A stretch of DNA of 35,669 nt from Hyphochytrium catenoides (GCA_900088475.1 FLMG01002741.1:1-35669); one strand, 5' to 3'; numbered from the stretch's first letter, positions 26,401 through 31,588 are shown. Program-made: numbers and translations. The notes: generated from the sequence alone by a model not told the origin.

Positions 26401-28951
26401 CTTCTAGCGCTAATCTTACTCTTTCATACAAGCCCTCCTTCGAAGTTTGCAGTACCTCTATCCCCTCGGGTATCTCCTCTTTCATTTGCTTCTCTAGGCT
26501 CTTGAACTGCGAGAGGCCAATGAGAACATTGTTCAGCCTCTTAGGATCCAGCAGCCCTACTCCTCTCTTCCTTCCTCTTTTCGTCTCCCCGGCTCCTGGC
26601 TTCTTTCCTTCTTGGTCCTCCAGTTTTCTCTCTCCAAATAAGTCTGCGATCTTTTGCAGCTCTCTTTCCGTGAGAGAGGAAGGAAGCGGCCTCTCTTCTC
26701 TCCTTCCCCAAATGGTATCAGAACTGAGAGCTTCGCCTCTCAATGGAGTCCAGTGTATCTGTCACATCAATGGATGCAAGAACCAGTGAGAGGAGCGCGA
26801 GAGAGCACATGCTGCTTTGCGTGAAGACAGGCCTTCCTGGGAGGCTATGCACGAAGGGAAGAGCACATGGAAAGTAGGAGACGGAGGAGAAAGTTTACGG
26901 ACTGTAGACGACTTATGGCTCCTACGTACCCTCCGCAGCGTCTTATTCAGGAGCCTGCCGCTGCTGGTCTTTCTCACTGCTCTTTCTCGATCTTCGGCCA
27001 TACTTTTAGACCCAGACGTTTGACCGCACTTCGGTTAAAGAGGGTGAGTGGGAAGAGAGAAAGGCAGATGACAAGTAAGAACGAAGTTCGCATCTCTCCC
27101 CATAAAAGGAAAGCACATTACCATCTGAAAAAGTACCACAGGCATCCCACATTGGTTAAACGTAGGCACGAAACGGGAGGAAAGTAGAACACAGAGAGAG
27201 AGAGAATAAATCATATGACTGACTACATGGGTGGAAGACCCTTACCTCCCCGTGACTTGTCAGGAAGAGATCCACAATCTCCTCCTCGACTCCGTCCTGC
27301 TGCATCTTCTGAGCTACTGCAGGAAGAGGAACGCCTACATCTAACATTTTGAAGTACTTCTGCATCCTTTCTTCTCTTTTTAGGCGGCTGAGAGGCGATT
27401 CTTCCTCTTCTGTCTCTCCTTTGCTCTGATGGCCTTGGCCCTCCTCTCTCTCTCTCTCTGCGTCCAAATAGTCCAGATAGCACCTGTCACATACTCTCTT
27501 AGGTCTCGCATCCCCTTCCCTCGATTCACCCACGGAATGTCGGGAGCAAGTCAAACAATACTCTTTCTCGCAGATGTGACAGAGATGTCTGCGGCGAAAG
27601 ATAGAGAACTGGACTCTACACTGCGCACAAGGGTGGGGAGATGCGCTGGGTACTAAAGAAGAAGATAGTGACGTTAGGCCACCCCAGGTTTGAAGAGAAG
27701 AGCGCACTAGATAAGTGATGGTGCTCTCCGCTCTTGATATGACACTCTGCCCTTTCTCTCCCTCTGCTACATCCTCATTTCTAGTTGAGAACTGAAGAAC
27801 TTCTTCTCTTTCTTTGTCACTCTTTTCTCTCATTTCCTTTGCTTCTTCCCACGTTCGCTGCTTCGCAACATCCAGGTAGGCGGTCTCTGCAGTCTGAAAG
27901 GCTATTTCCTCGACCAAAAGAGAGCGCAGCAGTATTTCTCTTGGAAAGAGGAGAGATGATGAGTTGTCCCATAAGAGAACAATAGATTTGCTCCGTTTCT
28001 CTCCTTCATCGGGGCCACGGATGTGTCCGGTCTTCCATCCGTCCTCAGGGTAGCACCAGACGGGAGAGACGATAAAGCCATCGTCTTCCGCTCCCATCTC
28101 TCCGTCAGCAGCTGTTCTAACTCTTGTCTCAGAGGGGATATAGGCGGAGAAGAGAATAGAGTTGCGGAGAGGCTGGAACTGCCATACTAATACCTTTCCA
28201 GGAGCGATTCGGACAAGTATCTGGTGCTTGGAAGCTACATAGGAAATGGGCAGAAGAGCGACCAATCGAGAAAGTACGGTTAGTTTGCAAGAAGGACAGA
28301 TGCGGCATGGGGCAGCGGATGAAAGAAGAGAGAACGAAACGAGGCAAACGTTTCGGTATCCCAAAGGTGATAACCTCAGGAAGGAAATAGGCGAGAGTGC
28401 TAAAGGAGAGACGCAGGAGAGGCAGAGATGAGAAAGACAGAGACTTGAGAGAGAAAGAGAGATCTTGAAAGCTGTACAGCGGCACGCAGGAGGCTATTAG
28501 GCGAAGGATAAAGTCTGCCTCTGTCTTTCTCTATTCCTTTCTGCCCAGACTTCGTCCAATCCGTCTCTTTCCGAAGTCTCTGCTGGTGATGAGCCTCACC
28601 TCTTCCTATAGCGACAGTTGTGCAGGGCACTGCCTGAAGCAAAAAGCCTTCGACGGTAGGGAGAGACGCGTCGGAGTCAGCTATCACATCTAAGATTTTC
28701 TCTTGGCTTCGTCCTTGCAACCCCGCAGAAGAGGAGCATTTCCCGGCCTTCAGAGTCTCCGTCATATCTTCTTTCTCTTCCTCTTCTCTGTCCATTGACT
28801 GATTATCAACATCTAGAGAAGGGTGGATAGAGAAGAATATAAGCATTCATTAGGAACTATGAATGACATAGCAGAATTCAAGGTTGGTACGTGGATGTTA
28901 AAGCGAAGTCAAGAAGAACAGATAGAGGAGCAGAGAGAGGAAAGAGAGAGG

Positions 28952-29000
<49 letters not shown>

Positions 29001-30301
29001 ACANNNNNNNNNNNNNNNNNNNNNNNNNNNNNNNNNNNNNNNNNNNNNNNNNNNNNNNNNNNNNNNNNNNNNNNNNNNNNNAGAGAGGAGAGAAGAGAAA
29101 GAACCCTCTTCGCCATGGGAGGATGGAAGAGTATCCCATTCTCATTGTAGCTCTTTCGAACGAGTCTCCTGTCTTCACAAAGAGAAGCGAGCGAGGAGAA
29201 GAAGGCCCTGCTATTCAAAAGCAGAAAGAGAAGAGCTCTTCCTCTCCCCCATCCTAGGTATCTCTCTCGCCTGGGTGGTTCATACTCTGTCTCAATGTAA
29301 TCTACCAGCTGCTGGAAGGCCGTGTTCAGAGTTCTCACGTGCCGTAAGAACTGGAAGTATCCTTTCTCTCTCCAGGACCTTCAGGTGGACAAAGAAGAAC
29401 AAGTAAGAGCTTATAATAAATAGAGCAGCTATTCATGAAATAGAGGAGAAAGATTTAGAGAAGAAGAGAGAGACAGAGAAACAAGTGAACAGCGCCAAGA
29501 GAGACAGGCTGCAGGATGTTTGAAACAATGCAAGACACCATCCCTGATCAAGGACAGATCACAAGAGAGAAAACAAAGCTGGCGAAGCAACAAGACGAGC
29601 AATCGGTAGAGAGCAGAAAGACGCCAAAGGCCGTTCAGAGTTAGAAGAGACGAGGGAAAGAGAGGCAATAGATAAAAGAGAGAGTTTAATAGAACGAGAG
29701 AGACGAGAGAGAGTAGGGAAGGTGTTGCCAGAATGCCAGAATTAAGGAGGCTAAATGGACCTATGCTTACCTGCTTGGCCTTCTTCTTCTGTCTCCTTTA
29801 AGCTTTGCTTCTTCCTTCTCGTCTCTTCCTGTCATTCCCAGCTCAGCTGTCTTTGCCTCTTTTCCTCCTATGAAGAGCCTCCCTCCCAGGGGAAGTAGCG
29901 GCTCTTCACTTGTACTCTCAACCTCTCCCAGCGTTCCTTCTTCTCCTCTTTCTTCTTCATCCACTGAGAGAGAGGAAGAGAGAGAATGCGAGGAAGAAAA
30001 AGAGAGAGACTCTGAAGCGAGACCATTCTCCAGCACAGCTTCTATCGCTGTGATCAGTAGTGCCGCCTGGCCCTCGGTGATTGGTTGCTCTGGATGCCTG
30101 ACAAACTCTACGACGACGGACTCCACTCCTAATTGGAGGCGCGCCAGTAACAAGTTCCATTCTTCTTCCCATTGTCTTCTTCTCTCTTCGCCCTCTCCCC
30201 GGGGGCAAAGGAAGAAGTGGTCTAGGAAAGAAAGGAGCTTAGTCAGTCGTCCCAGAGGACGAATGTGGAAGAAGACAGAAAGAAGGCACCGAGGTAGAGA
30301 T

Positions 30302-30337
<36 letters not shown>

Positions 30338-31588
30338 AAAGGAAAAGCCAAACAAAAGAACAGAGACGAAGTACGGAGCATCAAGAGAGAGAGAAGAAGA
30401 TGCAGAAACCACTCTTAGGCAATGGAGAATTGCACTTTGAGAAAGAGCAACCAGGAGAGAAAGCGAAAGACCAACGAATGAAAGAGTGAACCGCGATAAG
30501 AAATGAGAAAGTTACTGACCGTCCAACGCTTTAGGAGAATAATAGTCTCTCTCTCTCCTTCCAGCTTCCGCTGAGGCCAGATCCGCAGCTGCAATGGCCA
30601 GATCGGAGACTACCGAGGCGCGAAGAAGAAGAGTTCTCTTCCGCAAGAAAGAGGAAGAATTGTCCCATACAAGTAAACAGGAGAGAGAAGAAGAGAGAGA
30701 GGGCGAAGGAAGAGGATGAAGACCTTCCACAAGCCCGCTCTCGGCTGAAACGTTGAGGATCTGTTGCACTGTCTCTCCATTGATCTCCACCTGAAAGCTA
30801 AGCGAGCCTTCTGTCACCAGAAACTGCCAGATGGCAAAGAGGGAGGACCTCGTCTCTTCCTCTCTTCTTCCCTCTTTCTCCTTTCTGTTTGGGGCTTCTG
30901 GGAGATCCAAAGACAGTTCAAAGGAGGAGCCTCGGCTGCAAAAACGGACAAAGAGAGAGAGAAAACAGAGAGAAAGAGAAAGAGCGAGAAAAAATGAGAG
31001 AGAAGAGAGGGAGTAGAGAAAGCGTAGAGAAAGTGTGAAAGAGAGAGAAGGAGAAAAGAAAGGTTAGAATGAGAAACGAAAAAGATGTGAATAGAAGGAG
31101 AGGGGAGAGGAGAGAGAGAGAGAGAAAGAGGAAAAAGAAAGAGAAAAGGAGAGAACAGACACAGAGCGGAATGTGCAGTGTCTGTCAAAAAGAGAGGAAG
31201 ACGTGGTTGCCAGGATAAAGTTGCAGAGGTAATTAGCCCGGAAAGGAATAAAAGAAAGCTGAGAAGTTTGCGAAAGGACGAGAGAACTGCGTTTAAATGA
31301 AGAAAAAGAGAGTAAGGTAGAGAAGAGAGAGAAAGAGAACAGCCAAGTAGAGAGAAGGAGAAGAAGACGACGCTGCGAGCCGAGAGGAACTCTGGATGAG
31401 ACAAAGAGAATTACGGAGGAGGTAGTCATAAAGGAAGGAGATAAAGACAGGGGAGGGAGACACAGAGAGAGATAAAGAGGGTGCAGAGGAAGAAAGAACA
31501 AGAGAGAGAGCAAGAGAGAGCGAGAGAAAGAGAGAGAGAGGGAGAGAGCGAGAGAGAGAGAGGGAGAGAGCGAGAGGGAGAGAGCGAG

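What the first reader, a model, noticed from the sequence alone, without database searches (positions are those of the whole stretch)
27246..30935. Formin with a FYCO1-like membrane-trafficking N-terminus (GOLD-RUN-GOLD-FYVE)
Seen: exons encoding GOLD, RUN, a second GOLD and a FYVE-like finger splice in frame into an FH2 domain; only one junction is hidden by an N gap. Established: RUN+FYVE+GOLD is the domain set of the animal adaptor FYCO1, and RUN+FYVE defines RUFY proteins, which are small-GTPase/endosome adaptors. Typical formins instead carry GBD/FH3, PTEN-C2, PDZ or TM N-termini. Inference: this could be one polypeptide coupling GTPase and lipid recognition on endosomes or Golgi directly to actin nucleation. 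I do not recall a described formin with this architecture.
Basis: partly seen in the sequence, partly recalled or inferred. Interest (0 to 1): 0.85.

Follow-up and report, generated by a model that had tools for sequence, protein, structure and literature searches.

The report
Formin with GOLD-RUN-GOLD-FYVE head
This is a real minus-strand gene for an actin-nucleating formin with a membrane-trafficking-type front end (GOLD, RUN, GOLD, FYVE-type zinc finger); the same layout is conserved in water moulds such as Phytophthora but has never been studied.

Summary
On the minus strand, canonical GT-AG exons encode GOLD1, RUN, GOLD2, a FYVE-type zinc finger and a CCDC53-C-terminus-like motif. These splice in phase into FH2.

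- **Domains.** Each domain call is supported by Pfam, by a profile search of solved structures, or by AlphaFold2 plus Foldseek.
- **Relatives.** A profile built from 15 oomycete orthologues alone matches the window colinearly (E 1e-6 to 4e-53). About 30 oomycete proteins and two environmental contigs share the layout. Uninterrupted ORFs in relatives link every adjacent pair of domains.
- **Not settled.** No RNA run was listed. DNA contigs do not bridge the gap at 29004-29081, which hides the last RUN residues and one splice donor, so frame across it is untested. The exon with the start codon was not found.
- **Interpretation, partly supported.**
  - One polypeptide is very likely.
  - "FYCO1-like" is only a shared domain set: the order differs, and the RUN is closer to RUFY3 and PLEKHM1.
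  - The FYVE keeps its 8 Cys and RVC motif but lacks R(R/K)HHCR and WxxD, so PI3P reading is doubtful.
- **Novelty.** The architecture is not unique to this genome. It sits unnamed in databases, and a 2008 supplementary table lists a FYVE domain for one P. ramorum formin. I found no paper describing it.

The scan noted two other features of this same gene separately.

The parts
33444..33502 (-). Tentative first coding exon (MEDTRAFPELLPTILESLEV plus 2 nt), followed by donor GTCCAA. Unproven.
   Evidence: Among the ATG-to-GT candidates in the phase exon A needs, the one I judge most like the family N-terminus. The N-terminal family profile does not pick it up.
30520..30935 (-). Exon A: GOLD1 plus a following helix. 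Carries the family motifs WQF and WDNSSS.
   Evidence: Family HMM E 2.3e-9. AF2 pLDDT 84. Foldseek finds ACBD3 and SEC14L4 GOLD at 8e-5 to 1e-3. Alignment A3.
29771..30221 (-). Exon B: first RUN helices (30171..30001), then a window-specific acidic/Ser-rich insert of about 77 aa (30000..29771).
   Evidence: Family HMM positions 193-249, E 1e-6. Junction and phase.
29082..29378 (-). Exon C: rest of RUN, including the GWGRGR motif. It runs into the N gap.
   Evidence: Pfam RUN E 2.4e-5. Family HMM positions 250-348, E 1.6e-15, contiguous with exon B.
29004..29081 (.). Assembly gap hiding the last RUN residues and the donor of exon C.
   Evidence: Not bridged by contigs of runs X1-X3. Flanks read.
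28600..28812 (-). Exon D: acidic linker and the first strand of GOLD2 (PTVEGFLLQAVPCTTVAIGR).
   Evidence: The profile of the family N-terminus (GOLD1 first strand) hits it at E 3.5e-5. GT-AG and in phase.
27909..28234 (-). Exon E, part 1: GOLD2 beta-sandwich (WQF, WDNSSS).
   Evidence: AF2 pLDDT about 88-94 on most strand blocks. Foldseek finds SEC14L2/4, ACBD3 and p24 GOLD at 6e-7 to 7e-3.
27471..27647 (-). Exon E, part 2: FYVE-type zinc finger. It has 8 Cys and RVC, but RRRHLCH in place of R(R/K)HHCR and no WxxD.
   Evidence: Pfam FYVE E 5.3e-12. PDB sequence hits Lst2, WDFY3, Vps27, RUFY1, EEA1. Family alignment A4.
27246..27446 (-). Exon E, part 3: KYFKML..GVP..QKM..D helical motif (Pfam CCDC53 C-terminus-like) and the end of the exon.
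   Evidence: Pfam PF10152 E 4.8e-12. AF2 shows four short helices with pLDDT above 90.
26930..27028 (-). Exon F1: proline-free linker ending in KTLRR, which joins IHWTPL of FH2.
   Evidence: In-phase GT-AG. Linker length and the motif match the orthologues' ..FRKVHWT.L.
25426..26758 (-). FH2 exons F2 (26758..26231), F3 (26022..25962) and F4 (25774..25426).
   Evidence: Pfam FH2 E 3.5e-19 and 3.3e-22. Family HMM 2.5e-22 and 8.9e-36. F3 and F4 were placed by spacing to orthologues and by reading.
23498..25425 (-). Rest of the gene: an insert with WH2 motif(s), the last part of FH2 and the tail. Exon limits not worked out.
   Evidence: Pfam WH2 E 3.2e-7. Family HMM 24072..23791 E 2.5e-10.

Best explanation
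One multi-exon gene on the minus strand, from upstream of 30935 (5' end not located) down to about 23498, encodes a formin of a conserved but unstudied class. Its layout is GOLD1 - RUN - GOLD2 - long helix - FYVE-type zinc finger - CCDC53-C-terminus-like helical motif - short proline-free linker - FH2 (with a WH2-bearing insert).

Shown: the domains, their order, in-phase canonical splicing at every visible junction, and the same layout in oomycetes and in two uncultured relatives.

Inferred mechanism:
- The head is a membrane/vesicle-targeting and regulatory module that takes the place of the usual Rho-binding GBD/FH3.
- RUN docks on a GTP-bound Rab-, Arl- or Rap-type GTPase.
- The FYVE-type finger helps hold the protein on an acidic membrane. 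It is probably not a strict PI3P reader.
- The two GOLD domains bind protein partners.
- The FH2 dimer would then assemble actin on that organelle. With no FH1, the WH2 motifs rather than profilin would supply monomers.
- This would put in one chain what animals do in trans with the FYVE-type, WH2-bearing Spire protein plus FMN formins.

My confidence is about 0.9 for the architecture and single gene, and about 0.5 for the mechanism.
For: - Pfam hits on exon translations.
- Colinear hits of an orthologue-only HMM on one strand.
- Spliced pieces are stop-free and align as single HMM domains: positions 24-345, E 9e-37, and 418-925, E 1e-88.
- Orthologues carry GOLD_2+RUN+FYVE+CCDC53+FH2.
- Uninterrupted ORFs in relatives link the domains.
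- GOLD and FYVE folds are confirmed. The profile search of PDB finds ACBD3 GOLD, RUFY3/PLEKHM1 RUN and many FYVE domains.
- Of 14 listed strain or allele differences in modelled codons, 10 are synonymous.
- The linker before FH2 has no prolines and has the orthologues' length.
- That FMN formins reach endomembranes through FYVE proteins such as Spir is stated in PMC3817587.
Against: - There is no transcript evidence for this genome.
- The junction in the gap is unseen, and the gap is not bridged by DNA contigs.
- The start codon exon was not found.
- The FYVE finger lacks the PI3P motif and WxxD, so lipid specificity is unsupported.
- No GTPase partner, localisation or actin activity is known for any member.
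- The window's RUN carries an insert of about 77 aa that orthologues lack. An undetected intron there is possible.
Confidence: 0.65

Rival explanations
1. It is the same single gene, but the head is not a lipid- or organelle-targeting device. It acts mainly as a regulatory or scaffolding module. For example, a GTPase-gated autoinhibitory head could stand in for GBD/DID, with the degenerate FYVE-type finger and the GOLD domains serving as protein-protein interfaces.
For: The PI3P motif is degenerate across the whole family, while the Cys ligands and an SRH triplet are invariant or nearly so. GOLD domains in solved structures (ACBD3, p24) are protein binders. Most formins are regulated through their N-termini (general knowledge).
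Against: No DAD-like partner segment was identified. RUN and FYVE-type domains in known proteins (RUFY, PLEKHM, FYCO1, Spire) work on membranes. The two readings are not exclusive.
Confidence: 0.22
2. In this genome the locus holds two or more neighbouring genes. The split would be at the N gap (GOLD1-RUN | GOLD2-FYVE...) or at 27246/27028 (head | FH2, starting at the ATG inside exon F1). The fusion would then be an artefact of reading exons together.
For: There is no RNA evidence. One junction is hidden. Exon F1 contains an in-frame ATG (MAEDRER...). One P. ramorum annotation splits the orthologue into two models.
Against: All parts are colinear with single orthologous proteins. Uninterrupted ORFs in relatives cross both candidate split points. 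Only about 220-270 nt separate the parts, leaving no room for a terminator and promoter. The junction is GT-AG, in phase, and gives the orthologues' linker length.
Confidence: 0.08
3. The locus is a decaying or misassembled copy and makes no functional protein.
For: There are assembly gaps in and upstream of the gene. No ATG exon was found. RUN carries an unusual insert.
Against: Nearly 1000 spliced codons contain no stops. Differences between strains are biased to synonymous changes, 10 of 14. Family motifs are conserved.
Confidence: 0.04

Closest known systems
Uncharacterised oomycete formins with GOLD_2-RUN-FYVE-CCDC53-FH2. Examples: Saprolegnia parasitica SPRG_05820 / XP_012199791.1, Phytophthora ramorum XP_067745678.1, P. 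infestans PITG_03626, Albugo laibachii AlNc14C107G6256.
   Same: Same domain order, same family motifs (WQF, WDNSYS, GW.R.R, C.QC..FS.F.R, CSRH, KYFKML..GVP, FRKVHW), no FH1, and WH2 after the FH2 core. Colinear along the whole length.
   Different: Only 27-34% identical. The window copy sits on a very long branch outside all oomycetes sampled. It has many more introns and an insert of about 77 aa in RUN. Its FYVE basic motif (RRRHLCH) is closer to canonical than the oomycete SRQHECP.
FYCO1 (animal RUN - coiled coil - FYVE - LIR - GOLD adaptor)
   Same: Same three domain types. The family RUN matches FYCO1 RUN (PDB 7bqi) weakly, E 1e-3.
   Different: Different order, with two GOLD domains N-terminal to the FYVE. 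There is only a helix of about 50 residues instead of a long coiled coil, and there is an FH2. RUFY3 and PLEKHM1 RUN match better. FYCO1 has no actin-assembly domain.
Spire plus FMN-subgroup formins (animal vesicle-based actin nucleation)
   Same: A FYVE-type finger without a canonical PI3P pocket, WH2 motifs and an FH2 act on one membrane system. The Spire-formin link to endomembranes is described in PMC3817587.
   Different: In animals these are two proteins that bind in trans. Here all parts are in cis. No KIND domain or Spir-box was seen. There is no homology beyond the shared domain types.
Plant and stramenopile PTEN-C2 formins (class II)
   Same: Formins whose N-terminus is a membrane/phosphoinositide-type module instead of GBD/FH3. 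Stramenopile formins are noted for exotic architectures (PMC2386819).
   Different: A different targeting module. Class II formins have an FH1.
RUFY proteins (RUN - coiled coil - FYVE)
   Same: RUN and FYVE in one chain. RUFY3 RUN and RUFY1 FYVE are among the best solved-structure matches.
   Different: RUFY proteins have no GOLD or FH2. Canonical PI3P-binding residues are not kept here.

Membership tests
Formins (FH2 proteins) | FH2 domain (Pfam PF02181) including the GN.LN.G motif | tested here: met
   Pfam E 3.5e-19 and 3.3e-22, both above the curated cut-off. 'FGNVLNQGS' is present in exon F4.
Formins (FH2 proteins) | Proline-rich FH1 directly before FH2 (typical but not obligatory) | tested here: not met
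   The 33-aa exon F1 and the end of exon E contain no proline run. The orthologues lack one too.
Oomycete GOLD-RUN-GOLD-FYVE-FH2 formin family (unnamed) | Colinear match to all modules of the family profile | tested here: met
   Orthologue-only HMM: eight ordered hits on the minus strand. Spliced pieces score E 9e-37 and 1e-88.
GOLD domain | Beta-sandwich GOLD fold, or a Pfam GOLD/GOLD_2 match | tested here: met
   No Pfam hit on the window pieces themselves. AF2 models of both copies match ACBD3, SEC14L and p24 GOLD best. The family profile matches ACBD3 GOLD at E 2e-10. Orthologues hit GOLD_2 at up to 2.8e-10.
RUN domain | Pfam PF02759 match over the whole domain | tested here: inconclusive
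   The window's exon C hits profile positions 65-118 at E 2.4e-5, above the cut-off. The first part is recognised only through the family HMM. The last residues lie in the gap. Orthologues match positions 2-127.
Canonical PI3P-binding FYVE domain | Eight zinc-binding Cys and the RVC motif | tested here: met
   C202, C205, C218, C221, C226, C229, C248 and C251 are invariant, and 'KRVCDRC' is present. Pfam FYVE E 5.3e-12.
Canonical PI3P-binding FYVE domain | R(R/K)HHCR basic motif and N-terminal WxxD | tested here: not met
   The window reads RRRHLCH against RRKHHCR, RRHHCR and RKHHCR in Lst2, WDFY3 and Vps27. Most oomycetes read SRQHECP. No WxxD is seen before the first Cys.
FYCO1 | Order RUN - long coiled coil - FYVE - LIR - C-terminal GOLD | tested here: not met
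   The order here is GOLD-RUN-GOLD-helix-FYVE. Only one helix of about 50 residues is predicted. LIR was not examined.
Spire | KIND domain, a cluster of four WH2 motifs, and a Spir-box before the modified FYVE | not tested
   No Pfam KIND hit appeared in the exon scans, but no dedicated search was made. I treat Spire as a functional analogue only.

The most novel reading that the evidence does not exclude
This family is a self-contained organelle-borne actin nucleator. A single FH1-less polypeptide would combine a Rab/Arl-effector module (RUN), a Spire-like non-PI3P FYVE-type membrane finger, two GOLD cargo- or partner-binding domains, WH2 monomer-binding motifs and an FH2. It would do in cis what animals do with Spire plus FMN formin plus Rab. 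It would predate the oomycete radiation, being present in a deeper fungus-like stramenopile.
Probability: 0.3. Interest if true: 0.7.

Novelty: new variant of a known kind. Interest (0 to 1): 0.5.

Why it matters
Formins are usually switched on by Rho GTPases at the cell cortex. A conserved class whose head is built from trafficking domains (RUN, GOLD, FYVE-type), and which lacks FH1, would point to a different logic: actin assembly directed by organelle identity.

The class is present throughout the oomycetes, which include major crop and fish pathogens, and searches here recovered it only in oomycetes, this window's organism and a few environmental relatives. That makes it a tractable handle on oomycete-specific actin biology, since Phytophthora can be transformed. 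It also offers a natural experiment for comparison with the animal Spire/FMN system.

For annotation, the orthologues currently carry misleading names (Delphilin, soc-2) or are split into separate models.

Tried and rejected
1. **RNA evidence.** No RNA run was listed for the locus. The only runs are DNA contigs.
2. **Closing the gap with reads.** Contigs of X1-X3 end at the gap. Three overhang 40 letters into it, but the letters were not printed and none bridges it.
3. **Finding the ATG exon.**
   - I enumerated phase-compatible ATG..GT candidates and searched with a profile of the family N-terminus.
   - The profile instead hit GOLD2's first strand, which shows the two GOLD copies are paralogous.
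   - It also gave a weak hit at 33667-33590 that has no in-frame ATG and no usable donor.
   - The 33502-33444 candidate fits phase but is weakly similar. This is left open.
4. **Membership in FYCO1 or RUFY.** Rejected on domain order and on RUN affinities.
5. **Canonical PI3P-binding FYVE.** Rejected on motifs.
6. **Naming the organism.**
   - The ESM Atlas search on the neighbouring myosin was uninformative.
   - The tree puts the window on a long branch outside all sampled oomycetes.
   - The intron density reported for Hyphochytrium (PMC5795050) is merely compatible with this genome.
7. **Literature.** Nine searches found no description of the architecture. The only trace is 'FYVE' against P. 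ramorum Pr1 in a 2008 supplementary table. I did not verify that Pr1 is the same gene.
8. **Shorter splice inside exon B.** An alternative that would remove the RUN insert was rejected by eye, reading the sequence. I found no other phase-2 GT donor downstream of the RUN helices, and the conserved 'W.E..Y..FL' fixes the acceptor of exon C at 29380/29379.
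Full report
**What is there.** The feature lies on the minus strand. Reading 31400 to 23400 gives a series of open segments bounded by canonical splice signals.

The exons, verified base by base, are:
- A 30935..30520
- B 30221..29771
- C 29378..29082, running into the N gap
- D 28812..28600
- E 28234..27246
- F1 27028..26930
- F2 26758..26231
- F3 26022..25962 and F4 25774..25426, placed by reading the sequence and by spacing to orthologues

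Every visible junction is GT..AG and in phase. The spliced pieces A+B+C (387 aa) and D+E+F1+F2 (608 aa) have no stops. The finding's limits, 27246 and 30935, are exactly the end of exon E and the start of exon A.

**Domain calls.** Pfam on the exon translations gives:
- RUN (exon C): 2.4e-5
- FYVE: 5.3e-12
- The C-terminal motif of CCDC53: 4.8e-12
- FH2: 3.5e-19 and 3.3e-22
- WH2 further downstream: 3.2e-7

GOLD was not found by Pfam on the window pieces, so I tested it in other ways.
- AlphaFold2 models were built on alignments with orthologues. Exon A scored pLDDT 84 and exon E scored 78.7.
- Their best matches among solved structures are the GOLD domains of ACBD3, SEC14L2/3/4 and p24. In exon E, the FYVE domains of RUFY1, Vps27 and EEA1 also match.
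- A sequence profile of the family head (alignment A1, which also holds the window's exons as rows) matches ACBD3 GOLD at 2e-10 and SEC14L4 at 1e-6.
- The same profile matches RUFY3 RUN at 9e-8, PLEKHM1 RUN at 7e-7, FYCO1 RUN at only 1e-3, and many FYVE domains.
- GOLD1 and GOLD2 are paralogous. They share WQF and WDNSSS, and a profile of the family's N-terminal strand finds GOLD2's first strand in exon D at E 3.5e-5.

**Relatives.** An exhaustive HMMER search with exon E against 1.84 billion representatives found a dozen proteins that match over GOLD2-FYVE-CCDC53. Most other hits were proteins with tandem copies of the CCDC53-like motif.
- Pfam on the long matches gives GOLD_2, RUN, FYVE, CCDC53, FH2 and sometimes WH2, in that order.
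- They come from Phytophthora, Lagenidium, Aphanomyces and Saprolegnia.
- A profile search adds Peronospora, Nothophytophthora, Globisporangium, Pythium and Albugo.
- There, 29 cluster representatives carry FH2, and 17 of them carry all five families.
- An HMM built from 15 oomycete proteins only, with no window rows, hits the six-frame translation of the whole window on the minus strand alone and in strict order. RUN positions 193-249 and 250-348 meet exactly at the B/C intron.
- The spliced D-E-F1-F2 piece aligns as one HMM domain from position 418 to 925, E 1e-88.

**One polypeptide?** No RNA run was listed, so the case is comparative.

1. Uninterrupted ORFs in relatives link each neighbouring pair of domains.
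   - GOLD1-RUN sit in one ORF on two environmental contigs, L003 and L004.
   - RUN to GOLD2 lie in a 338-codon open stretch in Saprolegnia.
   - GOLD2-FYVE-CCDC53-FH2 lie in open stretches of 1171 and 583 codons on L003 and L004.
2. The linker between the CCDC53-like motif and FH2 is produced by the E/F1/F2 splices. It has the orthologues' length and ends in 'KTLRR|IHWTPL', matching their 'FRKVHWT.L'.
3. Only about 220-270 nt separate the parts.
4. Among the strain or allele differences listed by read laying, 14 fall in modelled codons and 10 of these are synonymous. That pattern is expected for a gene under purifying selection read in the right frame.

**The gap (tested first, as asked).**
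- On the 29082 side, the sequence encodes 'KRVLSLLSS', aligned with the family's 'RIASFLSAL' in the last RUN helix.
- On the 29003 side, it is CT-repeat intron ending in the acceptor of exon D.
- So the gap hides the last RUN residues and a donor that must be in phase 1.
- Contigs of three DNA runs end at the gap (three overhang 40 letters) and none bridges it.
- Continuity and frame therefore remain untested in this genome. I hold them likely only because RUN and GOLD2 are contiguous in relatives.

**What is not solved.** Exon A starts at a strong acceptor in phase 2 and has no ATG, while orthologues have about 20-30 more residues.
- Candidate 33502..33444 has an ATG, the right phase and a weak donor.
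- Candidate 33667..33590 has a striking 'CFLSALPLVLLSVRSG' but no usable ATG or donor.
- Neither is established.
- The window's RUN also carries an insert of about 77 aa that is absent from orthologues.

**How it probably works (inference).** The usual Rho-binding GBD/FH3 is replaced by a head built of trafficking domains.
- RUN domains of the best-matching solved proteins (RUFY3, PLEKHM1/2, FYCO1) are small-GTPase effectors on endolysosomal membranes.
- GOLD domains of ACBD3 and p24 are protein binders at the Golgi.
- The FYVE-type finger keeps its eight Cys and RVC. However, it reads RRRHLCH where Lst2, WDFY3 and Vps27 read R(R/K)HHCR. It reads SRQHECP in most oomycetes and lacks WxxD.
- I therefore expect at most non-specific acidic-membrane binding, as in Spire, rather than PI3P reading.
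- There is no FH1, and WH2 motifs sit after the FH2 core.
- My best reading is an organelle-recruited formin that supplies its own monomer-binding motifs. This is a cis version of the animal Spire/FMN pair, whose link to endomembranes through FYVE proteins is reviewed in PMC3817587.
- A rival reading is that the head is mainly regulatory or a scaffold.

**Comparison and novelty.**
- The gene is a formin: the FH2 test is met and the FH1 test is not.
- It is a divergent member of the oomycete family above, at 27-34% identity and on a long branch outside all sampled oomycetes.
- It is not a FYCO1 or RUFY relative in any sense beyond shared domain types.
- Stramenopile formins are known for exotic architectures. 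A P. ramorum formin (Pr1) is listed with 'FYVE' in a supplementary table of Grunt et al. 2008. I did not verify that Pr1 is the same gene.
- No searched paper mentions a formin with RUN or GOLD, or PITG_03626.
- So the architecture is real, conserved and present in databases under generic or wrong names, but undescribed. I class it as a new variant of a known kind.

**Source organism.** Other notes of this scan call the genome stramenopile-like, and a soil metagenome holds a near-identical fragment. Both fit a fungus-like stramenopile, but I did not identify the organism.

Noticed in passing
window 27270-27446 (minus): The motif KYFKML-x-GVP-x4-V-x-QKM-x-D, which Pfam calls the CCDC53 C-terminus, sits where FH1 would be. 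Outside this family, the same motif occurs as 3-13 tandem copies in hundreds of proteins. AF2 models it as four short helices with pLDDT above 90. The scan noted it separately (s1-350082).
   Followed up: partly
window 24132-24731 (minus): WH2 motif (Pfam E 3.2e-7) in an insert between the FH2 core and its last part. Some orthologues also show weak WH2 hits. The scan noted it separately (s1-349921).
   Followed up: partly
window 29771-30000 (minus): Window-specific acidic/Ser-rich insert of about 77 aa inside the RUN domain, between family-HMM positions 249 and 250. It is either real or hides an undetected in-phase intron.
   Followed up: partly
window 33590-33667 (minus): An open frame reads CFLSALPLVLLSVRSG, which is 9/16 identical to the family N-terminus (HMM E 0.16). 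It has no in-frame ATG (one sits a base out of frame at a TTT run) and no donor in a usable phase. It could be chance, an assembly error or a relic.
   Followed up: partly
window ~4300-10900 (minus) and ~13800-23200 (plus): Neighbouring genes. One is a multi-exon myosin, with P-loop 'GESGAGKTE' at about 9650 and 'DIFGFE' at about 8150. The other is a long gene of Cys-rich tenascin-type EGF repeats.
   Followed up: no
window 27936-28200: A soil metagenome run (X4) holds a 265-nt contig with only 5 differences over GOLD2 coding sequence. Runs X2 and X3 of the same organism differ from the window at many sites, so they are another strain or allele.
   Followed up: partly
L003 1077-5558; L004 658-5723: Two uncultured relatives, one on an ENA metagenome contig and one on a Logan contig, carry the same gene with few or no introns. 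They form a clade outside the named oomycetes.
   Followed up: partly
orthologues P0015, P0182, P0154/P0155: Public names are misleading: 'Delphilin' in Aphanomyces and 'Leucine-rich repeat protein soc-2' in P. nicotianae. One P. ramorum assembly splits the gene into two models.
   Followed up: no
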